Shown here: positions 8,211-42,075 of the stretch, in pieces
Position numbering within the stretch: position 1 is the first letter of the stretch
Layout of the letters: the number at the start of each line of letters is the position of its first letter
NCBI GenBank assembly: GCA_026770705.1
Contig: JANJGN010000007.1
Span: 109,802,001 to 109,866,000, forward strand
DNA from: Isurus oxyrinchus
Taxonomy: Eukaryota
Reading direction: 5' to 3'
DNA: 64,000 nucleotides
Translations under genes and position numbers: made by a program
Notes under the pieces: generated by a model
What the model was told of the DNA's origin: nothing
The model's database searches: none
Seen by the model: the letters and a program-made list of their open reading frames with translations, nothing else

Positions 8211-8265
8211 ATGTCGATGAGACTTACAGTTCAGTACATGGCTCTTCTGGCCATAAGTTTTCCAG
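8211..8265 (+). CDS. A1 exon 1, signal peptide
   Basis: MSMRLTVQYMALLAISFP+G; 55 nt; phase-1 donor CAG|gtaccc. Confidence 0.75.
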
Positions 8266-11200
8266 GTACCCGTGGTTGTTATATGCTCTGTTTTGGAATA
8301 GCTTAAATCGCATTTAACGCCCAATTGTATGCATTATAAAAATACATACGGTGCTTCTCCAATTCGGCTGCATTTGTTTTTTAATTGTTTTTATATTTTT
8401 CTCCTTATAGTTAGCTTTCTTTCTCTGACGTATGCAACTGCTGTCACCGTTCTTTTTTTTAAATAGCCGCCAAAGTAACTTCGAGCAAAGTGGATCAGTT
8501 CCCTAAACTCTTGAAGGCTGCCAGGGGTGACAATGTTTCCATGTTCTGCACATTTCCCATATTTGAAGACGCTCCTGAAGTTCATTGGTGGAAACGCAAC
8601 GAAGAATCGTTTCTGGAACCGGACAGTCGGAAGCGAGTCAATGTAAAAAAGGGAAGCAGTTCATTTGAAATTCTGAATGCGAGTGTTACAGACTCCGGGA
8701 TGTATTACTGTAAAGTAAAACATCAGCAAAGCTCTATTGGAGATGGAAGTGGCTCCCAGCTCATTGTGTGCGGTAAGTGTCAATGTACCGAGGAAAGGGA
8801 GTTCTTCAGCTGTGTGTGTGAGATATGTAATTTGAACTTTTATTACTAGATGAAAATCTTCATCATAAATTTAGGTGAACACTCCCCTTCTGAAGACAAG
8901 AATATTCCACGCACAAGATAACTTGTTGGCAACTGCTCAAAATTGCCAATTGAATCATTCTGTATCCAAGTGTCCGAAATTTGAGATGGACATCAAGAGA
9001 AAGGAACCATAGGATTCAAGAGAATGGAATTAAATCGGATAAACGGAATTCAGGGAGGGACCAACGATAATTTAAATAAATGACAGAGTAAATTCGAGGG
9101 AAGGAATGGCCTACTCCTGTTCTTATGTCCGCAGTTTATGCTGTGCAATTGTATCCATTGATAACTTGTTTGAAATGCCAAACTATTTCCGCAAAAGAAT
9201 GAGAGGGGGAGATGTTTATTTTGCCGTCAATTCTGGATTCCACCCCAAGTCCTAGATCTTCAGGGGCAATTAAGACGCCCAATGCCCTGTTTCAAACTCC
9301 GTGGTACGCCAATTAGATTTTTTCTGATGCACTCAATTCTGGTAAAGTGGAGGCAGGACACCAGCAAACATTTCTGTAAACGCCTGGGTCCTCATGTTTG
9401 TAACTCATGATTTCCATGCACACTCCTCATAGTCAGACGGACGTTACGGCATAAGGCCAAGGGACCACTGGTTGCTTTATTCCCAGTGGAAATTCTGTCG
9501 CATTTTGTATTGTACCAAGAGCAGATCCATGAAAAAAGAATGGTGAAATTCTGAGGCTTTGCTGCGAATGAAAACTCAAATAATTTTGAAAGTTAATAAT
9601 GGCTCTAATTTAATCATTTTCTTTATCCACAATTCAGAAAGTGCAAACGTGTGAAGAAAAGAATTGAAGGAGATTGATTATAATAAACAGCAAAACAATA
9701 CAAAACGAACAACGGACTTTACTTAGCTAAACAGTGATTGGAGATCGAGCTGACACAAGTTCACATTGCTAAATGTTAAATGTAGGACTCACATTAAGAA
9801 AATTCTAAAGGCAGAGCGCGTTTAAAAGACCAAATGAAATTCTAGAAGGGCAAAACCCGTGAAATTATATAAGACATGCATTTGATTAAGATTTTCTGTT
9901 CGATTTCACTGATCTGCATGGATGTTGTGATCTACACACCGATATATAATTGCCAATAAAGCCCTTTCATAATCAGAAATGTGTTTCAGCCCTCGGATTT
10001 CCTTCTAGGGAAAGTTCTTTTTGTAAAGGCTGTACGATCAGAAATCTCCACCATAGAAATATATAATCGATGCTAGCGCACGGATTTGAATCGATACATC
10101 TATCAACGTCTTGTCTGGAATCTTTATCGACGTCGGGTGATTTTCAATTGCACATCTTCTCAGTACTAATTGTTTAAACGAGCTATGTTTTGCAACATAT
10201 GAACTATTTGGAAAATGACAATTTAAAAAAAATAAACACAAAATGTTTAGTGGGACAATGATGATGACAGAAAAAGGTGAGAGTATCTCGCAGTTCGTGC
10301 GGACTTGTTCACGCTCTCTCCCATAGATTTGGATAGGGAATCTCATTTCTGCCAAAACCAATCCCACTCCAGGAGCGGATCTTCCATTCAGAGAAGTGCT
10401 TTGCGAATTTTCACCAGCTCCAGGAGATTCATCCTCGATGTGTATTGTTTGCAAAGCATCCGGGCATTTTGCCGTTCGCCGCAAAAAGATTTTCAAAATA
10501 AATACAAACTTAAGGTTTTTTTAAAAAACGATAATTATTGTCACATCATAACGGAGGGAAAGAAATGACAATGTGTTCATTAATTATTTTTCTCTGTTAA
10601 AGTTCCCCCAAGCCCCCTGAAAATCCTTTCGGTTGAAGGAATTTCAGCGAATTCTCTGAAACTCGAGTGTAAAACGTCTGCCTTTTACCCGAACGGTTTA
10701 ACAGTTTCCTGGAAAAGAGATGGTGTCCAAATTCTGACCGGAATGGAAATTGTGAAAACTGAGACCGTGGATGGGCTCTACGAGGTCTCCAGTTCTTTGG
10801 AAGAAGCACAGCCTGTCTGGAACAAAGTCATTTATTCCTGTCTGGTATATCACGTCTCTCTTGAGGTGCCCGCCAGTGTCAGCTACACCATCAATCAAGG
10901 TAAGATTGGAAACAGTTACAGCAGCAAGTGGGGTATGTGCTCCAACCTCTATTTACTTTTTAAAAAATCATTAATGGGACGGCCGGTTAGGGGGTTTTAT
11001 GACAATCGACATGGTCATCATTAAACTTTTAATTCCAGGTGTTAATTGAATTCAAATTCCACCATCTGCCATGACGGGATTCGAACCCAGGGTCCCAGAA
11101 CATTACCACGAGCCTCTGGATTATTAGTCCAGCGACAATAGCACAACACCATGGCCTCCCCTTAATTTGCTACAAATGTAGCTGGACTGCACTAAAAATC

Positions 11201-14200
11201 AACCAGGGTTTCCATTCCTGAACATCATCAGGAACTGGAACTGGAAACTGTATGTGTGGGCGAGACAACGATCCTGCTGGTCACTCGTAACCCCCACCAT
11301 CAAACACCCCACCAACACTCACTGATTTGGTTCTCACAAAAAGGAATATGAATTTGAATGACTGCCAGCACTTATGGAACTGTCACAGGTAAGAATTGGT
11401 AGCTTCTGCAGAGGAAAGCATAAAACTGGAATGAGAAAGAAATTGAAAATCAGTTCCAGCATGAATCATCTACTTTTCCAAAACCTGGTTTCCTTTGCAA
11501 CACTGCCCTCCCCACCACCCCACACTGCTTTGTGTGCTCTACCTTTACTGGGATACTCTTCAGTTATCTTGGTCTCACACTTCCCTCTTCCTAATTCTCT
11601 GCCCTTTTTTAGCTTCCTCCACCCCAACTCAAAGCCTAGCACTGAACAAGCCTTCAGTTACGTCCCTAGCCTCCTTTCAGAAGTCAAGCCATCGCTCTCC
11701 TTTGCAGATCACTTTGGGATACTTTGCTACGTAGTTATCTGATTGCACACTTGTCTCTGAGTTAATAGTTGTGGGGTCAAGCCCCTGTCCCAGATTTGTG
11801 CACTGAGAGTTACTGTCTTTCAGATGAACTGTTTATAGTTCACCCCTCTCCTTGGATTCACCTAGTTTGGTTGAAGGGTCGAAACGTCAACTCTTCTTCC
11901 CCGCCGATGCTGCCAGACCTGCTGAGTTTTTCCAGGTAATTCTGTTTTTGTTTTGGATTTCCAGCACCCGTATTTTTTTGTTTTTATCTCTTTCTTAAAC
12001 GGATGTCCTAACTGTTTGTTAAGGTGGATCCTGTAGCATTTATTAATATGGGCATAGAGTGTAAGAGCAAGCAGGTTATATTGAAACTGTATAAGACACT
12101 AGATCGGCCTCAGCTGGAGCATTGTGTCAAAATCTGTGTGAGCACTTTAGGAAGGACGTGAAGGCACCTGAGAGTGTCCACAAATGATTTACCAGAATGG
12201 TTCCTGGGATGAGGAAGTTTAGTTATAAAGATTGGAGAAGTTGGGACTGTTTTCCTTGGAGAAGAGAAGACTGAGAGGAGATTTGATAGAGTTTTCAAAA
12301 TCAGAGTAGAGATGGATAAAACTGCTCCTACTCGTGAAAGGATTGTGAATGAGAAGGCACAGATTTAAAATAATTGACAAAAGAAGCAAAGACGATTTGA
12401 GAGAAAACCTTTTCACACAGCGAGTGGTTAAGGCCTGGAATGCCATTCTGTGATTCTGTGATTACCAAAAGAGTGAAGGGGATCCTCTTCAGTGAACTGG
12501 CCAAAATTTATCCTGCTGATTTTGCCTACATAGCAACAGTGAGTGCACTTTTGTGAGGTGCTTTGGGATGTTCTGATGTTGTGAAATATATTTTCTTTCC
12601 AAGGGTGCTATGCAAATAAAAGCACGTATTACAATTGGGAACAAAATGCTTTCGAAATCATGGCTTCTGCACTTAATGGAAACCAGCAGACTATATCCGT
12701 GATGAGAGATATTTTGATATACAAACTCGAATATAAAAGGTGAATGTGGACTATATTTACCCCCAATGTCACATTAATCGGCATAAAATAAAATAATCAG
12801 ATGGTTTGTTGCTGGAGGAGGGAGAATATCTCCCTGAAGAGATCAGAGGGAGGTTGATGTGAGAACTACTCAAAAATTGAAAGCTCCTTCCTTTCATTCA
12901 TTTCTTGCCAAATGAAACGAATTTATACATAAAATGGATCGGGTCGAACAGATTCAATTTTATATCATGTGCATTTAAATTCAATATATGGACATATCAT
13001 TTTCTTGATCTCTTCTCAGCTGTCTACACCCTAAATTCAGAAATTTCCTTCATCTCCGGCTGCCAGCCTTTCCTTCTTTAAGACTCCCCTTCAACCCCAT
13101 CTCCACCTCTCCTAGTGTCATTTTATGTGAGTCGGTGTCCAGTTTTGTTTGATAAAGTCTTGTGAACTGGCTCAGGACGTTTGTTTGCTCCAAAAGTGCT
13201 ATATGAATGCAAACTTCACCTGGAATACTATGTACAGTTTTTGCCTTCCTACTTAAGAAAGGATATAATTGTTTTCAAAGGAGTTCAGAGACATTTTACT
13301 TGACTGATTCCTGGGTTGAAGAGACTACCTTATGAGAAAAGATTGGACAGGCTGGGCCTGTATCCATTGGTGCTTAGTAGAATGAGCGGTGTTCTTATTG
13401 AAAAATTTAAGGTCCTGAGGGGATTTGACAGGGTGGATGCTGAGAGAATGTTTCTACTTATGAGAGAGACTGGAATTAGGAATCACAGTTTAAAAATAAA
13501 TGCTCTCCCATTTAAGACAAGGAGATTTTTTTCTCACGTTAGTCTGTGGAACTCGCTTCCCCAGCGAGCGGTGGAGACGGAGTCATTAAATATTTTTAAG
13601 GCTGAGTTAGATAGATTCATGATTGACAAGGGAATCAAAAGCTATAGGAGACAGAGAGGAAAGTAGAGTTAAGGCCACATTCAGATTAAGCAAATGGTAG
13701 AGCTGGCTCAAGGGGCCGAATGGCGTACTCCTATTCTTAATTCGTATGTTCACATGTAAATTGTTCTTGTTATCTACTAAAATTTGCAGTTAGTGTTCTC
13801 TGGTAAGGCTGCTGAGATGTGTGTCCGCGCTAAAGAATGGAAGCCTTTACCACATTTTGCAGCCGTTGCCCATCAATCTGGTGCAGAGCGGCAGGGCAAA
13901 AGTCATGCAAGTCCCCTTACTCCTAACAAACAACAATCCTGTCCAGAGAGAAGTTCCCTGTGCCTGTATGTTTCCTCCATAAATTGCATTACTAATGGGC
14001 AGTTAATGTCGCTTGATAAACTTATAATCCTTGCACAGTTAGTGCCCTCAGAACTGAAAACAGTCGAGCTCCACTGACAGTCGGTGCTATTATCCTGAGA
14101 GAAACCTCTGTAACTTGCCCTGGGGGCGTGATTCCCTGTGCATAAATCTCGCTCTGTTCTAACTTCCTTATTTCAATTATTTGTTGATCCCTTAGGTGCT

Positions 14201-17200
14201 GGTGTCAATCTTAAGCTCATTTTTGGATATTTGGCAGGCGGCATATTGGCAATTTTACTACTGATAATTATTTTGACGAGACTCAAATTGAAAGCATCAG
14301 CTGGTAAGTACATTTTTTTTATTTTGCCCCATACTTCTATTTTCTAGGGCCCAGATATACTGTTAAAATACATAAAGGGCAGATTCATTGTGAGGGACTA
14401 AAGAGGACCTTGCTGCACCTTTAAAGAATGAAGCTAATACCACAAGAGCATTGTGTGATTGGCAGTTGAAATGACAATGTAAAGCGGATTTTGAAATGCA
14501 AATACTTAATCTTCTCATTATAACTATCCACTTATGTATACAGTTCCATTTTGCTAGATCAGGAATCGTTATGGTTCTGTTTTTTTTTAAATAACATCAG
14601 TGCGGGTCCAACTTTTAGAATGTAAACACTTTTAAAGTGGACTTAGGCTTTCTGCGGTAACGTAAAACGGCTGATTTCGAGCTGTTAACCGGTTTTACGT
14701 CTCCCCCGGATTTTCCTTCCATTGTAATGTTGCGACCTCTTGCCGACTTTTTGCCGACTCTCTGTCATACGTTTTACACTGTCGCACAAAAGCAAGGTCT
14801 ACTCCATTGGCTACAGTGCCACTGAGACTAATGAGAAGGCAATGCACAGTACATTGCAGCTGATATTGCTGAACACCTTCAGACATCATGGGCGGCATTT
14901 TACACCTGCGGAATTTTATGGTCCAGCCGCAGTCAATGCACTTTTGAACGGCTCGCCACATTTTACGGGGACGTAAAATTTCCTTACTTTATACACAGTA
15001 AATATGCTTAGAATCGAAAGCAAGATACTGGCTTTACTGGTGCTGATTCTGTTATTCAAGATGGATTTGTCTCTTTTAGGCATTAATAGAAATTCTGTGG
15101 AAGCAGCTCACAGAGAAGAGCCGGTAAGATTCTTATATTCCAAAAATGTGGCAAGGAGTGAGGAGGCGGTGTGTAGGAGGGGATACCAATAATGTTATAT
15201 TCAGCCGAGAAGATATTAATTAGATTTCAAATAGTCATAGGAGGTTATAGCACGGAAGGAGGCGATGGTGCGCCTGTGCAGCCTCTTTGAAATAACTACC
15301 TAATTAGATCCACTCCCACACACTTCACCTATAGCTCTCATTTTTTTTATTTTCAAACATTTCTCCCCAGCCCTTTTTGAAAGTTTAATTTCAATCTTCT
15401 TCCGCCACCCTTTCAGTCAGTGCATTCCAGATGACAACAGTATTCTATGCAAAAATCCTCATCTTCCCCTGATTATTTTGCCAATTAACTTAAATCTGTG
15501 TCCCTGAATATCGATGAAAACAGCTTCGCCTAATTTACTCGAACGAAACCTCAGAATTTTGAGATTAAATCTGTCCTTAACTTTCTCTGCTATAAGGGGA
15601 ACAATAGTAGATTCTATAATTTCTCTGACGTCACTGAAGTCCCTCATTCCTGGTGCCATTCCAGTAAATCTCTTCGCCAAGGCCTTGACATCCCCCATAA
15701 AGTGCAAAGACTGGAATGGTGCACGATAGCCCAGGTGAGGCTTGGCCAGTGATTTCTAAATGTTTAGCATTATTCCTTGTTTCTGCATTCTACTCCTTTG
15801 TTTATAAGTCCAAGATAAATACTTATCTTTACAGCAACATATACTTCTGACCACTCCCCCTTTCATAGTTCAAGTTATTTCTAAAATGGGAACTATCCAG
15901 GTGCCTGATTGCTTAATGTATTCATTATTAGCACCAGAAGACAGATCAGGAGGGTCCCAGCTTCTGTCTCCGCTCCTGTTGTATTGGTTGATCCAGGCTC
16001 GGCAACTGCTTCAGATGGTTCAATTGGCCTGAAATCTGTACCTCTGGGTTCAGCAGTGCCGCTTGGAAGTCGAGGTGGTGATTGGGGGCGGGGGTGGGGT
16101 GAGGTGTGGGGGTGGGGTGCCGGGAGAGAGGGTTTCTTAGGGTCTTGGATGCGATTTGCCACCTCGAAATGGAAGGAAGACAGACGCAGACTTCGTTGTC
16201 AGGTCTTCCAATAGGCTGGGCTGGCTGAGGAATAAAAAGACGGCCATTGCTCCAAGGAGGTGAGGGGGAGCTGGAGTTAATTGGAAAGGAGAAATGTGTA
16301 TTATCCATTAGATAGTTATTAACGGTGCTCCATATAATGACGATTTGAAATACATTGAGCGCACTGGGTTCCATGTCTAAAACATTACTCCAACCCAGTG
16401 ATGAGATGTTGGACACAATAATTGAGAATTGACAGAATGCACTTGTGACCTCGTTTTATGTTTGCTGTCTGCATATTACACTCTCAGACTCAGCTCCAAT
16501 TGAGTCTGAGCTATAGAGACGGGCCCGCCTCTTTCAGTATTTCATTTCTTACTTTTACAGGTTAGTCAAGAGCCAAATAATGAAATTGCTGCCTACGCTA
16601 GTCTAAGCTTGAGACACGACAATAGACCCTCCAGACGGAGACACGAGACAGAGCACACCGTCTATTTCCAGGTAAAACCGAGGGATTGAAGCGAATAATA
16701 TCCAAACCATTCCCGCACCATAAAATATCAACGTTCCGTGATAACAAAGTCAGTGTTGACAAACTGTACAGAGTCTCAAGGAGTAATTCTGACTCCAGGA
16801 GACAGAATAAAACGAGTCCTAAAGAACGGTCACCTCTCCCACAGACTTGGATGGAAACAGCAGTCAGGAGATATGTAAATGGATCTGTGGACTCTTATCA
16901 TTGATTTGACACAACAGCAGAGTCAAAATTATCCGCGTTTCTTTGCCGGGTCTGGCTGTGATAATAAATGCGCTGAGCTACACAAAAAAACATTAAACTG
17001 ACAGGTGTCACTAACGCCCATTTTAGAGACAAAACAGGGAACCGAGAACCGCCTGTCCTACACCACCAAGAAAAATGCGAAACCCAGGCAAAGGGAGAAG
17101 AGTCCGGTCTATCCCCAGGTACAGCTCAGGTCATTTATTGTAATACCGCTACGACGGGCTGCAGGAAGTGGAAAAGTCCCAGGTTTAACCTATCAACTGT

Positions 17201-17817
17201 GCTGAGTCGGCTGATATCAGCCAAGGTTCGTCATATTTTTCTCATGTCCCAGAGATCAGGAGATCGGCAGGGGTGGGAAAAGTGTGACTTGGAGTCGTCT
17301 CTCATGGGATAAGATGTCGAGGTTCAGACAATTGAACCTGAAAACAATGCTTTCCAATATAAGCATTCCAAACATCCATAATAGTCCAATAGAAATTCCT
17401 TCTGCTATTTTAATTGAAGTATTTACCTACTCTCTAAAATAAGCTATATTAACAGGGGAACCCATTTTATATGAAGGTTAAACATGAATTCCAACAAGAT
17501 TTAGGGGAGGGCTGCGGAGAGGGGAGAGACCGGACAGCGAAATAAAGCAAAATCTGGTTCCAATCAGAAGGTGGAAACTGAGAGGAAATTTCACTGCAGC
17601 CTTTTTTAAACCTCGGTTGTCTCAATCAATGAGTGAACAATGGATTAACGAGTGATATTAAATTTGACTTTCACAGAATAAACAAAAAGGCGGAGATAAC
17701 AAGCTGATTTACGCCGCTCTGCAGCTTGCTGATTCCAAGACAACGTCAACATCTAAACAGAAAGACGAAAGCAGCACATATGCAGAAGTAAACGTGTCAA
17801 AGAAAGAAAGAAGCTGA
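8211..17817 (+). CDS. Gene A1: non-rearranging L-V(J)-C1-TM-ITIM IgSF inhibitory receptor (NKp30/SIRP-like), 353 or 383 aa
   Basis: join(8211..8265, 8467..8772, 10603..10899, 14196..14303, 15080..15123, 16561..16671, [17029..17118], 17677..17817). All introns GT-AG with compatible phases (1,1,1,1,0,0,0); open frame throughout. Confidence 0.88.
8467..8772 (+). CDS. A1 exon 2, V-like domain with J-like G strand
   Basis: AAKVTSSKVDQFP..GDNVSMFCTFP..VHWWK..DSGMYYC..GDGSGSQLIVC; acceptor tttaaatag, donor G|gtaagt. Confidence 0.95.
10603..10899 (+). CDS. A1 exon 3, C1-set domain
   Basis: VPPSPLKI..LECKTSAFYPNGLTVSWKRDG..DGLYEVSSSL..YSCLVYHVSLEVP; C1 motifs C-x3-FYP-like and YxCxVxH; donor G|gtaaga. 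Confidence 0.95.
10975..11162 (-). mobile_element. tRNA-head SINE in A1 intron 3
   Basis: gggattcgaacccag (B-box on the minus strand); a related copy on + at about 40310-40590; absent from A2. Confidence 0.6.
11865..12460 (+). mobile_element. Penelope terminal fragment followed by a CR1 3' fragment
   Basis: gaaacgtcaac..gatgctgccagacctgctgag (11880-11990); CR1 ORF2 end (12040-12460) with ttctgtgattctgtga tail. Confidence 0.75.
13215..13755 (+). mobile_element. CR1 LINE 3' end
   Basis: YEKRLDRLGLYPL..LWNSLPQRAVETESLNIFKAELDRF. Confidence 0.9.
14196..14303 (+). CDS. A1 exon 4, transmembrane (no charged residue in core)
   Basis: GAGVNLKLIFGYLAGGILAILLLIIILTRLKLKASA; cttag acceptor, G|gtaagt donor. 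Confidence 0.92.
15080..15123 (+). CDS. A1 exon 5, cytoplasmic
   Basis: GINRNSVEAAHREEP; ctcttttag acceptor, CCG|gtaaga donor; homologue at 30977. Confidence 0.8.
15235..15830 (-). mobile_element. Degraded CR1 3' fragment
   Basis: DVKALAKRFTGMAPGMRDFS..QGHRFKLIGK. Confidence 0.7.
16561..16671 (+). CDS. A1 exon 6, cytoplasmic, ITIM-like AAYASL
   Basis: VSQEPNNEIAAYASLSLRHDNRPSRRRHETEHTVYFQ; strong acceptor ttacttttacag, donor CAG|gtaaaa. Confidence 0.85.
17029..17118 (+). CDS. A1 exon 7, optional or decaying cytoplasmic exon
   Basis: TKQGTENRLSYTTKKNAKPRQREKSPVYPQ; phase 0-0; needs an atypical ttttagag acceptor. Confidence 0.5.
17677..17817 (+). CDS. A1 exon 8, terminal, ITIMs LIYAAL and STYAEV
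   Basis: NKQKGGDNKLIYAALQLADSKTTSTSKQKDESSTYAEVNVSKKERS*; acceptor actttcacag. Confidence 0.9.
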   Translation, partial: NKQKGGDNKLIYAALQLADSKTTSTSKQKDESSTYAEVNVSKKERS

Positions 17818-22640: not shown

Positions 22641-23627
22641 GAACACTGAGATCCATGTCACAGAATGTTGACAGCACAGAAACCGGTCATTTGGCCCTTT
22701 GTCTCCATGCCAGCTCTCTGCAAGAACAACTCTCCTAGTCCCTGACCCCTGTCTTTTCCCCATAGCCCTACATATTTTTCTCTTCAGATAAGCGTCCAGT
22801 TCCTCTTTCAAAGCGACGATTGAATCAGATTTCATCCTTTTTTCATTTTTCTCCTCTGGTCTTATATGCTGGTGCATTCTTATGTTTATACACTCTGACG
22901 CTTCATGTCACACTCTGGTTATCATTACCCATATCGCTACACTACGCTATTGCGTTGGCCGTTCATTTTAATTCGCTACATTTTCCCTCACCTGATGTAA
23001 TCCATGATGTTCAAAAGCTATATGAATAAATAAGTCAATGAGACAAACTGGATTACTTTTTCAGAACCACCCAGTGCACTAATCAAATGGCTTCCTGCAC
23101 TGTAACCGAACCCAATGACCAGATAAACTATGGTTCGGTAATCAAACCACTCAGATTTAAGAAGAAATTGGCAAAAGAACAACAAGGCAGAGGAGTCGAA
23201 AGTATTTTACAAAATAAGTTGCTAGCATCTGGAGTTCCATAGCTGGACGCAGCGCTAGTAATTTTCAGGAGGGAATTGGATAGATGCTTTAAAAAAAAAG
23301 CAGGGCTTTTCAGGAAAAAGCAGAGGAGAGGAACGAATTGTATAGCTCTTTCAAAGAGCCAATCCGGGCACAATGGGCTGAGTGGCCTCCTCCAATGCCC
23401 TGTAACTCAGTAATTCTAACATATATAACACCTTTCTTTCTCTATTCAAGAATCCACGTAATATCAAGTTCATGTTAAATAATGTTTAAAAAACCAGTGA
23501 AACACGACGTTACATGACCTGTCCTGAGCATGTCTTTAAATTATGGCTACAGAAATAAAATAATAATTATCATTTTATGCTTCAAAAATATTATTTCAAT
23601 AGCAAAATCATTTTCTTTTCCTCCCAA

Positions 23628-23923
23628 TTTTGCCCATTCATCACAGAATCTAATCGATTGAGTCTAAATTCTGTCCATCAACTTCACCGGCTCTCCTGTG
23701 CAAAACAGCTCAGTTTTACCTTGAAGATCTCAATGTGACTCGTTAAGAACAGGGCGAAAGTTGGAACCGGGACCAATAGTACTAAGCAGCGAATCACGCT
23801 GGAAATGTATGAGCCTTCCAGCACTTTAAAATAACCGTATCAACCAGCAGTGAAGCTACATACAGCTGCCTAGAGCCTCATCTTTCTCTTCAGACCCCAA
23901 TATGGTCGATTAGAAATCTGAAG
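23628..23923 (+). pseudogene. Subfamily B C1 pseudo-exon, copy 1
   Basis: VLPIHHRI*SIES..LLCKTAQFYLEDLNVTR*..MYEPSSTLK/ITVSTSSEATYSCLEPHLSLQTP; acceptor reads ccaa instead of ccag. Confidence 0.8.
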
Positions 23924-24230
23924 GTGTGGTCTTGTTTTCAGGAACCCTTGCTCGCTTGTCGTTTTTCTTAATGCAAGGACGATTGTGAATCCGTGTTAGC
24001 ATTTGACGCTGTTGCATTCCCACATTGCATTGAGCATTTATTAGCCCGATTGTAAATTGCTTCACGAGTTGGCATTTTTTTGAATATCTTTAAAACATAC
24101 TTGCACTGGTACTAAATGTTCATTAAACGATTTGTTCTGAACTCGTTTATCAGTGCTTTTTTTTGTTGGTGCTGGTTTTATTGAACTTAATGCCAGTCGG
24201 TCTGACATCTCTGCCATTCTTTGTTTGCAG

Positions 24231-27295: not shown

Positions 27296-28702
27296 TGTCT
27301 TCATTATAAACTTACCACAGCGACGAATATTTCGCAATCCAGGTGCCTTTTTCTGTCCACTGCTTGAGATTGCCGATCTAACATTTTATATTCTGGATTG
27401 ACAGAAATTTGAGATGACTAGATTTTTGTTCGGAATAGGTACCAAGGAAATATAATTAAGTCGGAAAAATGGTGTTGAGGTAGAACTCAACTATAATCTA
27501 AATGAATGGCACGGGCAGTTGGGTGGGCTGAATGGGCACCCTGATCTTATGTCCACAGTATATACTTTGTGCGTGTGTCCATTAATAACTTGATCAAAAT
27601 GGCAAACTATTTCCAGAAAGGAATACTGCAACACCGGAAGAGGGGCGATGTTTATCTTGCCCTCAATGTTGGATTCCACCCAAGTCCCAGAACTTGCAGG
27701 ACAATTAAGGTACCCAATGTCCTTATTTGCATCTCTGCGGCACACCAAGTGCACTCTTTCTGATGTACTCACAACTGGTAAAGTGGAGGCTGGACAACAC
27801 CAAACGTTTCTATAAACGCCTGGGCTCCCGTATTTGAAATTCCTAATTTCCATGTTCACTCCCCAGAGGCAGGCGGAAGTGAAAGCACGAGACCAAGAGA
27901 GCACTGGCTTCTATCTCCCCAGCGGGAATTCTGTCGCCACTAATTCAATAATTTGCAATTGGCACAATAAAGGAAAAGAAAATGTGTGAGGATAATATGA
28001 GAAGGTTGAATTTAATAAATAACAGAACAATGCAACGTGATGCGTGACTTTACTTCCAGTTCTCAGGTGATTTTAGATGTCGCGGACAGATAGATAGGGC
28101 GGTTCACGTCAAAAAAAATGGTAAATTTGGGCTGTTCTAAGCAGAATCTTCTACAGGCAAAGTGCGTTCAACGAAGCTGTAGAACGGCAAAATCTTGGAA
28201 TTCTGTAAGACATGTACTCTGGGTTACGGTTTCCTATTCGGTTTCGGTAATCTGTACGGATGTTGTGATCTATACAGCCATAAATAATTATCAAAATAAA
28301 TTATTTGTGGAGAGCTAAGCTCTCCAGCTCTCCGTCCCCCTCTGGAGGAAGACCCTTTGGTGAAAAATACACGATACATTTGGACAGGAATCTCACTCGG
28401 GGCCTGTGCTGCAAACCCTACTCCCGGCCTAGGATCTGACATTTCCATTCCCAGCAGTGACACTTGCTTCCTGGTTATTACCCAGCCTGGGACATGCTCC
28501 CTCTTTGTGGATTGCTTGAAAAAACATCTGGCAAATTTGCTGTGCGACGCATAACATTGTGTAAAATAAATGCAAACACAAAGGTAAATTCGCGACAGCA
28601 AGGATCACTATTCTCACAGTGCGAGGTTAAGAGCATAGCGAGTGTAGTCAACTGAGAATATGCTCCATTAAATTCAAAAACTATATTTCTTTCCTGTTAA
28701 AG

Positions 28703-28999
28703 TACCACCAACACCACTGAAAATCATTCCTGTTGAAGGGATTTCAACGACTTCTCTGAACCTTCAGTGTAAAACGGCTGCATTTTACCCAGAGGATTTA
28801 AGAGTTTCCTGGCAAAGAGGTGGTGTGGAAATTCTGACCCGAATAGAAACTGTGAAAAACGAGACCGTGGATGGGCTCTACGAGGTCTCCAGTTCTTTCG
28901 AAGAGGCACAGCCTGTCCGGAACAGAGTCGTTTATGCCTGTCTGGTGTATCACGTCTCTGTAGAGGTGCCCGCCAGTGTCAGCTACACCATCAATCAAG
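28703..28999 (+). pseudogene. A2 C1 exon (open frame, donor GT changed to CT)
   Basis: VPPTPLKI..LQCKTAAFYPEDLRVSWQRGG..YACLVYHVSVEVP; intact acceptor; CAAG|ctgaga versus CAAG|gtaaga in A1. Confidence 0.9.
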
Positions 29000-30004
29000 C
29001 TGAGATTGGAAACATTTATGGCAGCGAGTGGGGATGTGCTCCAATCCCTATTTACTTAATAGACATGTGGCCGGACTATTGTCCAAACTCGATTATACAG
29101 GGTGAATGTGGACTGTATTCATTCTCACTGTCACATTAATAGGAATGAAATAAAATAACCACGATAGATAGCTGGAGGGGGGAGAGTATCTCCCTGAAGC
29201 GATCTGAGAGAGGTTGATGTGTGATCTGCTCTAAAAACTGAAAGCTCATTCCTCGTCACATTCTTGCCAAAAGAAACGAATTTACACATAAAATGGATCG
29301 GTTTTAGCACAGTTACTTCCATCTCCCCTATATTTAAATGGAACATATGAGAATATCATTGTGCGCATCAGTTTTTTCTGCACTGTGCTTTTAGCTATTT
29401 AACCCATAGACTCAAAAATTCCCGTTCTAAACATTTCCGCCTCGCCAACTCTCCTTTTAGACGCTCCCTGAACTCTACCTCTACGTGCCGGAATATCAGT
29501 TTATGCGTCTTGATTTTGTTTGATAACGCTGCTGTGAAGTGCATTTGGGTGTTTTGCTACGTTAAAAGCGAAGTATTCTTGTTACTTACTGAAAGTTGCA
29601 GTAGGCACCCTTGGTAAGCCTGCTTAGTAGTGTTGAAGATTGGAAGATTTTGCCACTCTTTGCAGCCGATGCGCATCTGTCTGGTGTAGCACAGAAAGGT
29701 AAAAGGTGTACGTGTCTTAATCTTAACAAACAACCCACACGTCCAGAGAGAAGCTTCCTGCGTCTTTATCGATTTATTCCCTCCATAAATTGCGGTACTG
29801 GCTTCCAATTTATATCGTTTGAAACACATTATAACCCTTGTGCAGCTACTCCTAACTTATGAAAGCGGCCGGTCCCCACGGACATTAAGCGGTTACCCAA
29901 GGGATAGCTTTACAGCTCGCCCTCCTGTGTCTGACACATAACTCCCTATATAAATCTCGCTGTGTTCGACAGGTCCTTATTTCAATCTTTTGTTGATCCT
30001 GTAG

Positions 30005-30109
30005 GTACTGGTGTCAATCCCCTGCTGGTCTTTCGATGGACAGGGGGCATATTGGCGATTTTACTATTGATAATTATTTTGACTACACTCAATTTAAAAG
30101 CATCAACTG
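30005..30109 (+). pseudogene. A2 TM exon containing Arg
   Basis: GTGVNPLLVFRWTGGILAILLLIIILTTLNLKAST; both splice sites intact. Confidence 0.88.
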
Positions 30110-30234
30110 GTAAGAGCATTTTTTACTTCGCCACATACTTTATTTTTCTAAGGCCCAGTTATACCGTCAAAAAACATGAAGGGCGGTTGAATTTGTATGG
30201 AATTCATTGCCACAGAAGGCTTGGGAGATCAGGT

Positions 30235-30409
30235 TATTGAGTGTATTTTAGACCGAGATAGATAGGTTCTTGATTGGTAAAGGGATCAAAGGTTACGGGG
30301 AGAAGGCGGAAGAATGGGGTTGAGAAACTTATCAGCCATGATTGAATGGCGAAGCAGATTCAATGGGCCGAATGGCCTAATTTCTGATCATATGTCTTAT
30401 GGTCTTATG
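30235..30409 (+). mobile_element. CR1 3' end
   Basis: EIDRFLIGKGIKGYGEKA and tcttatggtcttatg tail; absent from A1. Confidence 0.8.
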
Positions 30410-30976
30410 AATAGTGTTTCATGAAAAAGGAATAACGAGCACGTTACTGCATCTTTAGATAATGAAGTTGATACTACGAGAGCGTTATGTGATTGAGTAT
30501 TCAACATGAAAATATAAACCGATTTTGGAAAGCAAATATTTCATCTTCCCAATGGAACTATTCATTCGGTTTATACACTTCCAATTTGCTACACCCGGCA
30601 TCCTTCACGTTCTGCATTTTCATAAATTTCAGTGCGGGTCCAGACCTCGAAGTGCAAACGCTTTGAAGTGGATTTTGAATTTCTGTGACAGTGTAAAACG
30701 GGTGATATGGAACTGGCAGTCTGTTTTACGTCACTGCCTGATTATATTTCCATTGTAATTTTACGATGTAAAATGGTTTGCCGACTCTTTGTCACATGTT
30801 TTAGACTATCGCACAAATGGCAGTGTGTTCCATTGGGTGCAGCGTCACTACGGAGCACTTCAATTTTCAAGACTCCTTCTTTTGCATAATTAAAGCGTTT
30901 AGCTTGGAAGTCAGGTTATTCATTTTACTTGCACACTCATTAAATTATTCCAATTGGATTTCTTCTCTTCCTGTAG

Positions 30977-31008
30977 CCGTTAAGAGAGATTCCGTGGAAG
31001 CTGACTAG
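30977..31008 (+). pseudogene. A2 exon-5 homologue ending in a stop
   Basis: cttcctgtag|AVKRDSVEAD* versus A1 GINRNSVEAAHREEP. Confidence 0.75.
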
Positions 31009-31114
31009 AGTGATGACTCGATGTGGTGAGAATGTTCTTCATAGTCCAAAAAGAGGGGTTAGCGGGTAACAGCAAGAAATACTGCAAACAGCCGAGAAGG
31101 ATTTAATTACATTT

Positions 31115-33385
31115 CATAGAATCATAGAAATGCAGTTATTATGCCTATCCCGCTTCTGTGAAAAAAACTATCCAATTAGCCAAATTCCCCATCTTTACCC
31201 AGAACACTTCATTTTTGTTTGTTCAAGAAAATCTCTAATTCGCTTTTTTAAAGTTTCCATTGAATCTGCTTCCTCCAACCTTTCAAGAAGTGCGTTCCAG
31301 ACCAACAACCGGCTACACATAAAAACACTCACCTTGTACTGATTATTTTGCCAATTACCTTAAGTCGACGTCCATTGGATACCAACCCAACCACCACTGA
31401 AAACACTTTATCCATATTCACTTCTGTCAAAACTCTCATAATTTTGAATACCTCCATTATATCCCCCTTTATGTTTCTCTGCTCTGAGGAGACCAGTCAT
31501 GGGTTCTCTAGTCTCCCCAATGTAACTGAAGTCCTTCATCCCTGGTACCATTCTAGTAAATCATCTTTGCAACGGCTCTTAATAATGGTGTTACCAGAAT
31601 GGGACACAATGCACCAATGAGGCTTAAGCAGTGATTTATAAAGGTCCAGCATAAATTCTTTCTTTTTGCACCCCGTGTCATAATTCATAAGGCCAGAATA
31701 AACGTGTGTTTATTGTATCATACACTACTGACGGATACTGTTTCATCATTCAAATTATTTCAACAATACGAAGTCCTTAGATGCCCAGTTGCTTAATTGG
31801 CACTTTGTGTAGCATAACCAGATGTGTAGCATAACTTGGAAGGTGCCTAGTTAAAAGTATTAAAAAGAAAGAACATGGCAATAGTGCAGGGTAAAGATAT
31901 CGGTCATGATAGCCGCAGTGTGACAGAACGTAAAGGCAATTGGGTGCACCAGCAAATCGGCTCAGAGTAAGGAAAATGGTAAAGGGACAGAAGTAACCAC
32001 TCTGTATCCGAATGCAGCCAGCATTTCGAACAAGATAAGTGATTTGATGCTACACATCGGTGTGAAAGCAAGTTCTCAGCAAGTCACAAACAGAATACAA
32101 AGGGATATAGATAGGTTATGTGAGTGAGCAATAATTTGGCAGATGGTGTATGATGTGGGAAAAAGTGAAGTTATCTTCATTGGAAGGAAAAGAAGAAAAG
32201 TGTAATATCATTTAAATGGAATGAAACGACAGAATACTGTGGTACAGAGACAGAGGTGAGGAAGAATTTCTTCTCTCAGAGGTTATGGGGGATGGGGGGC
32301 TGGAGGTAGGAAAGTGGTGTTGAGGCCAGAATCAGATCAACCATAATCTCGTTGAATGGTCTACTCCTACTCCTGCTTCTTGTGATATTGTCGTTAACCT
32401 TTGCAATTTTGTACCAAGAGAGCAATGGAGGCTGGGTAATTGAATATAATCGATGTTGTATTAGACAGATTTTCATTTACGAGAGTGCTGAGGGTGATTT
32501 TATCTTGGAGGGGTGGATGGTGGAAGGAAAGAAAGACAGAAACGAGAACAACTTGCCCTATGCCACTGTCCAAGCCAGCACCAGGAAAAAAAAGACAAAG
32601 CACAGGCTGACCGAGGAGAATACAGGACAGCTGAAATAATTGATTGAAACCGTGTAAGTGTAATGTGGTATGATGCGAAGCTGTAGGAATTGAAAAGGTC
32701 CCAGTTTTAATAAACCAACTGGTTGTGTCAGTTGATCTCAGACAAGGTTCATCAGATTTGCCTCATGTCCTAGAACAGAAAGACCTGGGAGTAAATGTGC
32801 ATCAATCTTTGAAGGTGGCTGGGCAAGGCAAGTGGGCGGGTAGCAAAGCTGAGGGGATCTTGGGCTTCATAAATAGATACATTAAGTGCAAACGCAGGGA
32901 AGTCATGTCAAACATTTATAATGATTTGCTTAGGCCACAGAGTATCGCATCGAGTTCTGGTCACAACACATTAGGATGTGTGGGCCTTTCGGAGGCTATA
33001 GAGATGATGTGCCAGAATGGTTCCACGCATGGGGCATTTTGAGGGGAGATTTGATAAAGCCGTACAATATTATAATAGATTCAGAGAAGGTAGACAAAGG
33101 AAAACTGTTTCTATTAGCTGATGGTACAGGGACAAGGTTTTGGGCAAGAGATGCAGGGGGAATGTGAGGAAAAACTTTTCAGACAGTGTGTGGTAATGAC
33201 CCATAACTTGATGCCCACCAGGGTGGTGGAAGCAGAGTTCAATGATTTCAAATGGAAATGGGATGCTCACTTCAAGATTATTTCCTTCCAGGTTTACAGT
33301 GATAAGAGTCGGGGAATGGAACTGACGGAATTGCTCCGTGGAAAGCCTTTAGACTGGGTGGGCTGAATACCCACCCTCTGAGCTT
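31115..33385. mobile_element. Cluster of degraded CR1 fragments (about 31115-31700 minus; 32080-32390 and 32770-33385 plus)
   Basis: EQKDLGVNVHQSLKV, LRGDLIK and related CR1 motifs. Confidence 0.7.
32529..32625 (+). pseudogene. A2 exon-7 relic with ITIM LPYATV
   Basis: KKDRNENNLPYATVQASTRKKKTKHRLTEENT; no recognisable acceptor. Confidence 0.65.
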
Positions 33386-33522
33386 CCAGTGGACTCTGAC
33401 TTTAAACTGAATTTGATAATTGATGAGTGCAAATTTCATTACAGCCTTTTTCTAAGCCCTGATTGCCTCAAGCACCGAACTGACGATAAACTAACAGGTG
33501 ACATTAAATATTACTTTCACAG

Positions 33523-33646
33523 ATTAAAGAGCCTGAGTTACGCCGCTCTGCAGTTTGCTGATTCCAGGAAAACATCAAAATCTTGACAGGAAGGCGAACA
33601 TGTAGTGTACCCAGAAGTGAACAGGACAAAGAAAGAGAGAAGCTGA
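33523..33646 (+). pseudogene. A2 terminal ITIM exon relic
   Basis: 17-nt deletion causes a frameshift; LSYAALQFADSRKTSKS*QEGEHVVYPEVNRTKKERS*. Confidence 0.85.
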
Positions 33647-33739
33647 GAATCGAAAAACAATTCAAAGATGAGAGCTTTTCATGTGTGTAGGCCCAGGGCA
33701 TTCAATTCTTCTTAAGTGCTCTGCCCGAAGGCAAGTCCA

Positions 33740-40200: not shown

Positions 40201-42075
40201 TCCTTGGAATATGTTCTACCCAATGCACCAAAGAGGAATGACCTTTGTGCACCGAATTCCTACTTTGTATCAAATTCTCAAGTACTTACTCTGTTTCTGT
40301 CTCATTCAGGCATAATGGAATATTTACTGGAATATGGGTTGAAATGGGTTTAAATCCCACCTCAGCAGCTTTTCAATTCAAATAATAATATCTAGAATAT
40401 GAAACCATCCTTGATTGTTGTGAAAAGAAAGCAACTGATTCTCCGATGTCCTTTAGGGAAGGAATCTGCCATCCTTGCCTGGCCTAGCCTACATGTGATT
40501 CCAGACCAACAGCAGTGTGGTTGACTCTTAACTGTCCTCTGAATTGGCTAAAGCGCCACTCAGTTAAGCGCAATTAAGGGTGAGCAAGAAAAACAAACAG
40601 GAAGTGGCTTATTGGCTACAGTGATATTTGAAATCAAAATATCTCTCTTCAAGTAATAAGCTCCTTCAGGCTGAAATGCAAGATAAGCCCCTTCACATGG
40701 ATCAAAACAAATGGTCTGATAAAGGGAATTTTAATGGATGGGTTTCTTTAAACAACATTAATGCATGCCCCTGGTTCTGCTGTGATTCATGTATGAAAAC
40801 AACCAGGATGTGGGAAATGTCAAAAGGAACTGTTCACGGTATCGGCTACCAGAATGCATAGATGAAGTAGCTCACTTACTCCTACTTAACTATTTCAATC
40901 TTAGCTAGTTCGAAGCATAACTAAGCTTGCAATCAGAAATGCTATAAGTTCTCGTGAATTCAGCTAAGAGTCTGGAAGCCAAAGCTTTCATTCCAATGGC
41001 GCCATTGTATCCGTGAAGACTGAAGCTATGCACACTGAGAAAAGAAAGCTTGGCTGATTCACCCGAGGGAATGGTTAAATTACAAGCTGCTGTACAGGCA
41101 GCTTTTTTAAAGGGCATTTTCATCCTTGGTCATAAAGAATGTTCCAGACATGTTGCCATATAACAATCCTCCGACAACCAATGTTGCCCTTATAGAACTT
41201 CTACCCTCGGAGTTTAGTGCTTTCTGTTTCAATGAAGATCCATAAACGAGGGACAACAACTCAAGAAGCACTTTAAAATTACAGCAGTAATGTGAATACT
41301 GGAAATCTGAAAGTACAACAAGAAATGCTCTAAAGTTTGTCCAGCATTTTCTATTGGCTCAAGAGATGTGGCAAGGGCAGCATTAATTATCCATCCCTAG
41401 TTGCCCGTGAGAAGATGATGGCGAGCCCCTTCTTGAACCTTTGCATTCCATGTGCTGCAGGAACACCCACACGGCTGTTGCAGGGTGCAGAGGTGCGGAT
41501 CAGTTCTGGGAATTTGACCCTGGGGCACTGAAGGAATGGCAATATATTCCCAAGTCAGGATGGTGTCGGTTCTGGACACCATACGTTAGCAAGGATGTGA
41601 AGGCATTAGAGAGAGTTCAGAAAAGCACAACAAACGAGGGGAGAAGAAATTGCTTCACAACAAAAGTTGCTATGAACTGGAATTCACGACATGGGAGCAG
41701 GAATTGTAATTTTCAAGTGGGAAAATGGATCGATACTTAGGAATAAAAAGCAGGGCTTTGGAGAAAGAGCAGGAGAGTTGAACTAATTGCACAGCTCATT
41801 CAATGAGCCAATACAGGCATGGTAGTCCGAATTGCCTCCCAGTATGTTCCATGATTCAGTAATTCTAGCATGTATATTACTTTTCTTCCTCTATTCAAGA
41901 GTCCATGTACTTTCTAGCTTCATGTCAAATAATATTTGAAAACACAGAAATTAAAAACGCACCGATGAAATATCACGTTAAAGGACCTGTCCTGAGCGTG
42001 TGTCTAAATTACAGGCTGCAAAAATAAAATAATAATTACTATTTCAAAAGCGAAATCACTTTATTTTCCTTCCAA

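What the first reader, a model, noticed from the sequence alone, without database searches (positions are those of the whole stretch)
8211..17817. Non-rearranging antigen-receptor-like inhibitory receptor (L-VJ-C1-TM-ITIM) anchoring a multigene cluster
Seen: a complete spliceable gene. Its V-like exon already contains the J-type strand (GSGSQLIV, cf. GxGTxLxV) and is followed by one C1-set exon, a neutral TM and a tail with LIYAAL, STYAEV and AAYASL. No recombination signal sequences were seen. Established: VJ plus C1 is the architecture of TCR and Ig light chains; C1 domains are largely confined to Ig/TCR/MHC/tapasin/SIRP/B7-H6; NKp30 is a germline VJ without C1 or ITIM; SIRPa is V-C1-C1 with ITIMs. 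Inference: a poorly characterised cartilaginous-fish receptor family resembling the hypothesised pre-RAG antigen-receptor precursor and used as an innate checkpoint. Relics of further copies in the same 64 kb suggest birth-and-death evolution. I cannot tell from sequence alone whether the family has been described.
Basis: partly seen in the sequence, partly recalled or inferred. Interest (0 to 1): 0.85.

Follow-up and report, generated by a model that had tools for sequence, protein, structure and literature searches.

The report
Shark SIRP-like V-C1 inhibitory receptor gene
This is a real, apparently intact shark gene for a cell-surface receptor with one antibody-like V domain (built-in J motif), one C1 domain, a membrane anchor and an inhibitory tail. 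It is one more member of a large shark, ray and chimaera family that public annotations already hold under inconsistent automatic names, so it is a good example rather than a discovery.

Summary
On the + strand, 8211-17817 is an eight-exon gene with canonical AG/GT sites and matching phases, totalling 1152 nt (383 codons).

- **Structure:** split leader, one V-like exon ending in a J-type strand (GSGSQLIV), one C1-set exon, a neutral TM, and four tail exons.
- **ITIMs:** the last exon carries two canonical ITIMs (LIYAAL, STYAEV) 23 residues apart. AAYASL is not canonical.
- **No rearrangement:** no recombination signal flanks the V exon.
- **Relatives:** the gene is collinear with RefSeq XP_067906043.1 of Heterodontus ("SIRP-alpha-like"). 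It belongs to a family of dozens of clusters in sharks, rays and chimaeras, with inhibitory and charged-TM short-tailed forms.
- **Link to SIRP:** the family's C1 domains form their own clade, sister to bony-vertebrate SIRP C1 domains with moderate support. The tail matches a lungfish SIRP-like tail. Raw ectodomain similarity to SIRP is no higher than to Ig or MHC C1 domains, and there is one C1 domain, not two.
- **Other copies:** the second copy in the window is a dead relic, and three more C1 relics exist.
- **Expression:** not shown.
- **Earlier finds:** the scan had already found this family on other DNA of this genome.

Most likely function: an ITIM receptor that recruits SHP-1/2, ligand unknown.

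The parts
8211..8265 (+). Exon 1: ATG and first part of a split leader (18 codons + 1 nt, donor CAG|gt, phase 1)
   Evidence: Sequence; 61% identical to the leader of P0155; splice table
8467..8772 (+). Exon 2: end of leader plus V-like domain with a germline J-type G strand (GDGSGSQLIV), then an extra Cys at the V/C1 boundary; phase 1/1
   Evidence: Pfam I-set 3.7e-10 and V-set 3.6e-9; 78% to P0155 and P0176; AF2 pLDDT 91.9; fold ties with NCAM2 Ig1, skate VNAR, TCR V and CD79b at Z 13.5-14.9; no RSS
10603..10899 (+). Exon 3: PPSPL hinge plus C1-set domain; phase 1/1
   Evidence: Pfam C1-set 6.3e-9; FYP, 13-residue Cys-Trp spacing and LVYH; AF2 pLDDT 88.9; all top structural neighbours are C1-set domains at Z 13.9-15.1; 65% to P0155
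14196..14303 (+). Exon 4: stalk and uncharged transmembrane helix (LIFGYLAGGILAILLLIIILT), stop-transfer RLKLK; phase 1/1
   Evidence: Sequence; 90% to P0155 TM
15080..15123 (+).
   Evidence: Sequence; 93% to Scyliorhinus P0175 residues 257-270; needed to keep the frame
16561..16671 (+). Exon 6: cytoplasmic module with AAYASL (non-canonical ITIM-like) and TVYFQ; phase 0/0
   Evidence: Sequence; 55-58% to P0155 and P0170
17029..17118 (+).
   Evidence: Sequence; 44% to P0155 residues 305-340; least certain exon
17677..17817 (+). Exon 8: two canonical ITIMs, LIYAAL and STYAEV, 23 residues apart, then stop
   Evidence: Sequence; 69% to P0155; gapless 31% match over 42 aa to the tail of lungfish SIRP-like P0151 with the same Tyr-Tyr spacing
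27435..33707 (+). Copy A2: segmental duplicate of 9009-17878 that starts downstream of the V exon. Intact C1 ORF (28705-28998, 76% aa identity), TM exon near 30000 with Arg (VFRWTGG), last exon 33533-33643 with an in-frame stop. C1 donor GT is CT. A relic
   Evidence: blastn; tblastn; donor sequence; C1 of A and A2 are sisters at 99/86
23612..24031 (+). Decayed C1-like exon with several stops
   Evidence: tblastn
42060..42480 (+). Decayed C1-like exon with a stop
   Evidence: tblastn
54071..54385 (+). Decayed C1-like exon
   Evidence: tblastn

Best explanation
Gene A (8211-17817, + strand) is an intact member of a SIRP-like family of germline V(J)-C1 receptors found across cartilaginous fishes. 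It is the likely orthologue of Heterodontus francisci XP_067906043.1.

**Shown:**
- An eight-exon open reading frame with canonical splice sites.
- A short V/I-type domain with a J-type G strand encoded in one exon, so no rearrangement is needed.
- One true C1-set domain.
- An uncharged TM.
- A tail whose last exon carries two canonical ITIMs 23 residues apart.

**Inferred from what is established for SIRP-alpha and other tandem-ITIM receptors:** ligand binding by the V domain leads to Src-family phosphorylation of the tail tyrosines. The two SH2 domains of SHP-1 or SHP-2 dock on the paired phospho-ITIMs, and activation of the (probably myeloid or lymphoid) cell is damped.

Family members with short tails and an Arg in the TM would be the activating partners, giving a paired-receptor system. 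The ligand is unknown. The gene sits in an array that turns over by birth and death.
For: - **Gene model:**
- **Domains:** Pfam; PDB sequence hits; AF2 models at pLDDT 91.9 and 88.9; C1-set-only structural neighbours.
- **No RSS:**
- **Orthologue:** collinear with P0155 across all exons, at L 61%, V 78%, C1 65%, TM 90% and tail 44-69%. Exon 5 is 93% identical to a Scyliorhinus model.
- **Family breadth:** 170 representatives at E<=1e-10 for the C1 exon, many of them L-V-C1-TM proteins of 250-400 aa with LTYAAL/TEYAxL tails. Named members come from Heterodontus, Scyliorhinus, Mustelus, Heptranchias, Mobula, Narcine, Pristis, Amblyraja, Hypanus and Callorhinchus.
- **Activating-type members:** R in the TM and a short tail.
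- **Link to SIRP:** the family profile hits SIRP-alpha V+d2 at 57.9 bits and d3 at 45.4 bits, including the VPPT hinge. In the C1 tree, the shark family (100/96) is sister to the turtle and lungfish SIRP clade (96/82) at 87/84. The tail aligns without gaps to a lungfish SIRP-like tail.
Against: - **No transcript evidence:** the only candidate RNA runs cover repeats, not the exons, and may be from another species.
- **Weak exon 7:** it rests on 44% similarity and a tagag acceptor.
- **No special closeness to SIRP:** single-sequence similarity of the C1 exon to SIRP d3 (27.9 bits) is no higher than to MHC-I alpha3 (35-37), teleost Ig-like C (32-34) or human lambda C (34.8). The V domain is only 20% identical to a true SIRP V.
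- **Limits of the tree:** the SIRP sister relation has only moderate support. The tree lacks labelled IgL, TCR, tapasin, B7-H6 and UrIg references, and its rows were chosen as hits to the shark C1.
- **Untested:** ITIM function and the ligand.
Confidence: 0.75

Rival explanations
1. The family is a relic of the antigen-receptor lineage itself: a membrane-bound two-domain VJ-C1 chain closer to UrIg/UrIg2 or to IgL/TCR than to SIRP. Its SIRP-like tail would then be convergent, imposed by SHP binding.
For: - The C1 exon's best single-domain PDB hit by sequence is Ig lambda C at 34.8 bits.
- Lambda light chains match the family profile over V+C in one stretch at 85-90 bits, against 57.9 for SIRP-alpha V+d2.
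- UrIg2 C3 is the top structural neighbour (Z 15.1, rmsd 1.5).
- It has a split leader and a single VJ exon, as UrIg2 does (PMC12227049).
- PMC12227049 Fig. 2 postulates a two-domain VJ-C1 ancestor.
Against: - In the C1 tree, the ray multi-C1 protein and the teleost Ig-like C domains fall outside the shark+SIRP group.
- UrIg2 C domains score only 17-22 bits against the exon.
- All structural Z scores are tied within 1.2.
- Tail order and spacing match a lungfish SIRP-like protein.
- Inhibitory/activating pairing is typical of SIRP-type innate receptors.
Confidence: 0.12
2. Gene A is an unexpressed or recently dead copy: open by chance of recency in an array where most copies decay.
For: - All other copies in the window are dead.
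- Earlier notes on this genome report mostly dead copies in other clusters.
- No transcript was found.
Against: - All eight exons are open, and the 14 splice sites of the seven introns are all canonical AG/GT.
- All invariant family residues of V and C1 are kept.
- 65-90% identity to an orthologue across exons, including tiny tail exons, implies purifying selection.
Confidence: 0.1
3. It is a B7/butyrophilin-type ligand (V-C, as in B7-H6/NCR3LG1) rather than a receptor, as some RefSeq names suggest.
For: - RefSeq names several members 'NCR3LG1-like'.
- Pfam gives a sub-threshold butyrophilin Ig-C hit, 8.2e-5, 23 bits against a cut-off of 27.
- The B7-H6 C domain is a tied structural neighbour at Z 14.2.
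Against: - No B7 protein is among the best 60 PDB hits of the family profile.
- The J-type G strand, the tandem ITIM tail and charged-TM partners are receptor features.
- The automatic names are inconsistent: SIRP-alpha-like, tapasin-related-like, Ig lambda-like and TCR beta-like for close paralogues.
Confidence: 0.03

Closest known systems
SIRP family (SIRP-alpha/beta/gamma; SHPS-1/PTPNS1) of bony vertebrates
   Same: - N-terminal V-type domain with a J-like G strand, followed by true C1-set domain(s) in a linear array, one TM, and a tail with paired tyrosine motifs that recruit SHP-1/2 in SIRP-alpha.
- Inhibitory and charged-TM activating paralogues.
- C1 clade sister to the turtle and lungfish SIRP C1 clade.
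- VPPT hinge shared with SIRP-alpha d3.
- Tail aligns without gaps to a lungfish SIRP-like tail.
   Different: - One C1 domain, not two.
- The V domain is short, lacks C'' and is only about 20% identical to SIRP V. The family V profile gives every non-chondrichthyan protein 28 bits or less, against 85 or more inside the family.
- C1 similarity to SIRP is no higher than to Ig or MHC C1 domains.
- Large, fast-turning multigene arrays.
- CD47 binding and synteny are untested.
RefSeq models of cartilaginous fishes, e.g. XP_067906043.1 (Heterodontus francisci, 'tyrosine-protein phosphatase non-receptor type substrate 1-like isoform X1')
   Same: Collinear exon by exon, 383 vs 380 residues: same leader, V(J), C1, TM and four tail modules, at 44-90% identity.
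   Different: Another species. Those models are automatic predictions with inconsistent names, and I found no paper on them.
UrIg and UrIg2 (non-rearranging elasmobranch VJ-C1 genes; PMC12227049)
   Same: Germline VJ in one exon with a split leader, followed by C1-set domain(s). Found in cartilaginous fishes (this family in elasmobranchs and chimaeras; UrIg/UrIg2 are reported from elasmobranchs only). UrIg2 also has a TM. UrIg2 C3 is the top structural neighbour of the C1 model.
   Different: UrIg has 3 C domains and UrIg2 has 9-11; no ITIM is mentioned in that paper. Both are single-copy, disulfide-linked homodimers. Sequence similarity to this gene is low, at 17-22 bits per C domain.
Ig light chains and TCR chains
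   Same: L-V-J-C1 order, split leader, phase-1 introns, G-x-G-[ST]-x-L-x-V G strand, and C1 hallmarks.
   Different: No RSS and no separate J segment. An uncharged TM plus an ITIM tail, instead of a secreted form or a charged TM that pairs with CD3.
NITRs of bony fishes and NKp30/NCR3 (from general knowledge, not tested here)
   Same: Germline V domains with J-like motifs on innate receptors. NITRs also come as ITIM and charged-TM forms in large, fast-evolving arrays.
   Different: NITRs have no C1-set domain and are known only from bony fishes. NKp30 has a single VJ domain without C1 or ITIM.

Membership tests
Chondrichthyan SIRP-like V(J)-C1 receptor family (RefSeq predicted models) | Collinear L-V(J)-C1-TM-tail architecture with an annotated member | tested here: met
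   tblastn of P0155 hits all exons in order; exon 5 is 93% identical to P0175
Chondrichthyan SIRP-like V(J)-C1 receptor family (RefSeq predicted models) | V and C1 domains fall inside the family by profile score and tree | tested here: met
   The V exon is 78-79% identical to members P0155, P0176 and P0001. On the family V profile (built with this exon as its first row), members score 85-135 bits and outsiders 28 or less. The C1 domain lies inside a 100/96 clade. Invariant residues are kept
SIRP family | V-set domain followed by two C1-set domains (V-C1-C1) | tested here: not met
   There is only one C1 exon between V and TM, and the orthologue P0155 likewise has one C1
SIRP family | C1-set hallmarks: (F/Y)(F/Y/H)P in the BC loop, 13 residues from Cys(B) to Trp(C), xVxH after Cys(F) (PMC2785349) | tested here: met
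   CKTSAFYPNGLTVSW and CLVYH in exon 3; Pfam C1-set; C1-only structural neighbours
SIRP family | Cytoplasmic tail with paired ITIM-type tyrosines | tested here: met
   LIYAAL and STYAEV lie 23 residues apart in exon 8. There is a gapless 31% match to lungfish SIRP-like P0151 with the same spacing. SHP binding itself was not tested
SIRP family | Domains nest within the SIRP clade (orthology) | tested here: inconclusive
   The C1 clade is sister to the SIRP clade, not inside it, at 87/84 with limited sampling. Pairwise scores to SIRP are no higher than to MHC or Ig C1 domains. V is 20% identical
SIRP family | Binding of CD47 by the V domain; synteny with the SIRP locus | not testable with these tools
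   The window holds only receptor copies and transposon debris. There is no binding assay
Rearranging antigen receptors (IgL/TCR) | V and J split and flanked by recombination signal sequences | tested here: not met
   V and the J-type strand are in one exon. No heptamer lies in 8000-11000. One RSS-like match in 64 kb against 1.4 expected
UrIg/UrIg2 | VJ exon followed by three or more C1-type domains; close sequence relation to UrIg | tested here: not met
   One C1 domain only. UrIg2 C domains score 17-22 bits against the exon. The structural Z of 15.1 is tied with HLA-DP, IgL and others
B7/butyrophilin (B7-H6-like) | B7-type V and Ig-C domains | tested here: inconclusive
   Pfam C2-set_3 is below its cut-off (23 vs 27 bits). 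No B7 protein is in the top 60 PDB profile hits. B7-H6 C is a tied structural neighbour

The most novel reading that the evidence does not exclude
The chondrichthyan family is the sister of all bony-vertebrate SIRPs and keeps the ancestral two-domain, membrane-bound VJ-C1 format. The second C1 domain of SIRPs would then have arisen later, in bony vertebrates. That would make the family a living example of the two-domain VJ-C1 gene postulated as the starting point of UrIg, Ig and TCR (PMC12227049, Fig. 2), already wired to inhibitory signalling on innate cells.
Probability: 0.2. Interest if true: 0.7.

Novelty: new member of a known kind. Interest (0 to 1): 0.4.

Why it matters
C1-set domains are nearly confined to molecules of antigen recognition. 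A germline VJ-C1 chain is the form that theory gives to the gene the RAG transposon split. Cartilaginous fishes carry large arrays of such chains, paired into inhibitory and activating forms, and I found no paper on them in the searchable literature.

This window supplies one clean, intact, fully phased gene model, with an orthologue in another shark, to serve as a reference. It also shows the array's decay products next to it.

The family offers a way to test whether SIRPs and antigen receptors share a two-domain ancestor. It may also show what innate 'checkpoint' recognition looked like in early jawed vertebrates.

The individual gene adds little, because the scan has already reported the same family at several other places in this genome.

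Tried and rejected
- **Expression:** The look-up of sequencing runs gave six holders of about 35% of the words, most likely low-coverage DNA, and five small 'RNA?' runs with next to none. Laying four of the latter on 8400-14350 put contigs only on repeats (10987-11185, 11783-12578, 13176-13772) and none on the V, C1 or TM exons. That is no evidence either way. Only one 6-kb stretch could be laid, so the tail exons were not examined.
TM directly to 16561 or 17677 breaks the frame.
- **A second V exon:** none was found with 50 family queries.
- **A2 as an activating partner:** rejected. It has no V exon, its C1 donor is CT, and its last exon has an in-frame stop.
- **Word-indexed searches:** queries with the orthologue and with a lungfish SIRP-like protein returned no mammalian SIRPs. 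No curated IgL, TCR, tapasin, B7-H6 or UrIg sequences were available as ids, so the tree lacks them. A turtle protein, verified as a true SIRP at 283 bits to 2wng, served as the reference.
- **Structural search:** it did not single out a nearest family, because the top rows are all tied.
- **Literature:** searches for a description of the family found none. The 2019 PRARP paper could not be found with the search tool and the 2023 UrIg paper is not held; both are subscription-journal papers.
- **Joined model left out:** the joined 383-residue product was not searched, folded or otherwise sent to any tool. All work was exon by exon by reference, or on the natural orthologue P0155.


Full report
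**What is there.** The window is AT-rich, transposon-laden vertebrate DNA. On the + strand between 8211 and 17817 lies a gene I could phase completely.

| Exon | Coordinates | Content |
|---|---|---|
| E1 | 8211-8265 | ATG and 18 leader codons, phase-1 donor |
| E2 | 8467-8772 | end of leader plus V-like domain |
| E3 | 10603-10899 | hinge plus C1 domain |
| E4 | 14196-14303 | stalk and TM |
| E5 | 15080-15123 | tail |
| E6 | 16561-16671 | tail |
| E7 | 17029-17118 | tail |
| E8 | 17677-17817 | tail and stop |

- The 14 splice sites of the seven introns are all AG/GT with pyrimidine tracts.
- Phases are 1-1-1-1 through the ectodomain and TM, then 0-0-0.
- The exons sum to 1152 nt, or 383 codons plus stop.
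The 44-nt E5 resolves this. It is 93% identical to the matching stretch of a Scyliorhinus model.
- E7 is the least certain exon, with 44% identity to the orthologue and a tagag acceptor.

**Domains.**
- *V-like exon.* It hits Pfam I-set (3.7e-10) and V-set (3.6e-9), the V-set match running through the G strand.
  - It ends in GDGSGSQLIV, which fits G-x-G-[ST]-x-L-x-V.
  - Its AF2 model is confident (pLDDT 91.9) and has nine strands.
  - Only 54 residues separate the cysteines and there is no C'' strand.
  - Its structural neighbours are tied: I-set NCAM2 (Z 14.9), skate VNAR (14.6), TCR V (13.8) and CD79b (13.5).
  - It is therefore a short V/I-type domain with a J-type strand.
- *C1 exon.* It is a true C1-set domain.
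  - Pfam C1-set scores 6.3e-9.
  - It has the FYP motif, exactly 13 residues from Cys to Trp, and LVYH after the second Cys, the criteria listed in PMC2785349.
  - Every top structural neighbour of its model (pLDDT 88.9) is a C1-set domain: UrIg2 C3 and HLA-DP beta2 at Z 15.1, IgL C 14.5, IgNAR C3 14.2, B7-H6 14.2 and SIRP-gamma d3 13.9.
- *TM and tail.* The TM has no charged residue. E8 holds two canonical ITIMs, LIYAAL and STYAEV, 23 residues apart. AAYASL (E6) has Ala at -2 and is only ITIM-like. E7 has no ITIM consensus.

**No rearrangement.** V and the J-type strand are one exon. No heptamer occurs in 8000-11000. The single heptamer/nonamer match in 64 kb (34743) is what chance gives, at 1.4 expected.

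**Relatives.**
- An exhaustive HMMER search with the C1 exon found 572 representatives at E<=0.001 and 170 at E<=1e-10.
- Besides multi-C1 proteins, many hits are proteins of 250-400 aa with the C1 at about residues 122-218. Each of these has a J motif near 111, a PPTPL hinge, a TM, and tails with LTYAAL/TEYAxL motifs.
- Their sources are RefSeq and UniProt predictions from Heterodontus, Scyliorhinus, Mustelus, Heptranchias, Mobula, Narcine, Pristis, Amblyraja, Hypanus and Callorhinchus.
- Their names are inconsistent: 'tyrosine-protein phosphatase non-receptor type substrate 1-like' (that is, SIRP-alpha-like), 'signal-regulatory protein beta-1-like', 'NCR3LG1-like', 'tapasin-related-like', 'Ig lambda-like' and 'TCR beta-like'.
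- XP_067906043.1 of Heterodontus (P0155, 380 aa) is collinear with gene A. Identities are leader 61%, V 78%, C1 65%, TM 90% and tail modules 55, 44 and 69%.
- Some members have short tails and an Arg at the start of the TM (P0007, P0176, P0177, P0035). This is the usual signature of activating partners.
- The family is therefore a paired-receptor family, present in both elasmobranchs and holocephalans.

**How close to SIRP?**

Evidence for a link:
- A profile of 30 members hits human SIRP-alpha (2wng) at 104 bits. V+d2 gives 57.9 and d3 gives 45.4, and the d3 match includes the VPPT hinge.
- I verified a turtle protein (P0199) as a true SIRP, at 283 bits to 2wng, and used it with lungfish SIRP-like proteins in a C1 tree.
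- In that tree the shark family with both window copies is a clade (100/96). The bony-vertebrate SIRP C1 domains, both d2 and d3, are a clade (96/82). The two clades are sisters at 87/84. MHC-I alpha3, teleost Ig-like C and a ray multi-C1 protein fall outside.
- Exon 8 aligns without gaps to the tail of a lungfish SIRP-like protein, at 31% over 42 residues with the same 23-residue Tyr-Tyr spacing.

Evidence against a close link:
- Raw similarity of the C1 exon to SIRP d3 (27.9 bits) is no higher than to MHC alpha3 (35-37), teleost Ig-like C (32-34) or human lambda C (34.8).
- Lambda chains match V+C of the profile in one stretch at 85-90 bits.
- The V exon is only 20% identical to a true SIRP V. 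The family V profile drops from 85 bits or more inside the family to 28 or less outside it.
- The tree lacks curated IgL, TCR, UrIg, tapasin and B7-H6 rows, and its rows were ascertained as hits to the shark C1.

My reading is that this is a distinct chondrichthyan family. It is SIRP-like in architecture, tail and pairing, and probably the sister of bony-vertebrate SIRPs, but it is not a SIRPA orthologue. It fails the V-C1-C1 criterion.

**The rest of the 'cluster'.**
- A segmental duplicate of 9009-17878 lies at 27435-33707. Its C1 ORF is intact (76% aa identity) and is the sister of gene A's C1 (99/86).
- The duplicate starts downstream of the V exon, and no second V exon exists anywhere in the window.
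- Its C1 donor is CT instead of GT, and its last exon has an in-frame stop. It is a relic, not an activating partner.
- Three more decayed C1 exons lie at about 23612-24031, 42060-42480 and 54071-54385.

**Mechanism.**
- *Shown:* the architecture and the motifs.
- *Inferred from SIRP-alpha and other tandem-ITIM receptors (PMC12975943):* ligand engagement leads to phosphorylation of the paired tyrosines, docking of the tandem SH2 domains of SHP-1/2, and inhibition.
- *Unknown:* the ligand and the expressing cell.

**Expression.** It could not be tested.

**Known or new.**
- I found no paper on this family.
- The idea that a V-C1 innate receptor is related to the antigen-receptor precursor was published for SIRP-alpha in 2009 (PMC2785349).
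- UrIg and UrIg2 are now the favoured non-rearranging relatives (PMC12227049; PMC10751288).
- Earlier notes of this scan describe the same family at other places of this genome, including two sites about 12 Mb upstream on the same piece, with the same conclusion.
- This gene is therefore a new member of a known, database-annotated but unstudied kind.

All searches used single exons by reference or the natural orthologue.

Noticed in passing
window 8769-8771 (last full codon of the V exon): Gene A has a Cys at the V/C1 boundary (QLIVC-VPPSPL) where most family members have Tyr, Phe, Leu or His. A related-species ORF (P0001) and some Callorhinchus members (LTVCV...) share it. An unpaired Cys there could make disulfide-linked dimers, recalling the G-strand disulfides of the UrIg2 dimer.
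   Followed up: partly
window 27435-33707: Copy A2, noted by another first-stage finding as an 'inhibitory-to-activating switch', has an Arg in its TM exon. However, it lacks a V exon, has CT instead of GT at the C1 donor (28999-29000), and has an in-frame stop in its last exon. It looks like a dead relic, not an activating partner.
   Followed up: partly
window 16561-17817; family alignment A1: The tail is built of repeated exon modules: an ITIM-like YAxL, then a basic stretch, then TVYxQ-TKQ. Their number varies between paralogues and isoforms: three modules here and in Heterodontus isoform X1, two in most members, and more in some Callorhinchus proteins. This suggests exon duplication and alternative splicing tune the number of tyrosines.
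   Followed up: no
window 11783-12578, 13176-13772, 10987-11185: Intronic repeats with very high summed contig depth in the small public runs (up to about 170,000 at 11783-11981). These are abundant transposon families, apparently transcribed or simply multicopy. LINE-type reverse-transcriptase ORF fragments recur across the window (e.g. 44662-45168, 59477-59977).
   Followed up: no
proteins P0003-P0006, P0010-P0012 (ray and other chondrichthyan models, 1000-2100 aa): The top hits of the C1 search include uncharacterised proteins with 6-12 near-identical C1 repeats (e.g. Hemitrygon akajei XP_072885329.1). They look like the UrIg2 type with homogenised C domains described in PMC12227049. Their identity was not checked.
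   Followed up: no
proteins P0016, P0054, P0067, P0045 (RefSeq models of family members): Several automatic gene models carry long N-terminal extensions that match transposon-derived sequence in this window (e.g. 44312-44470, 59133-59372). These are likely annotation artefacts that fuse TE ORFs to receptor genes.
   Followed up: no
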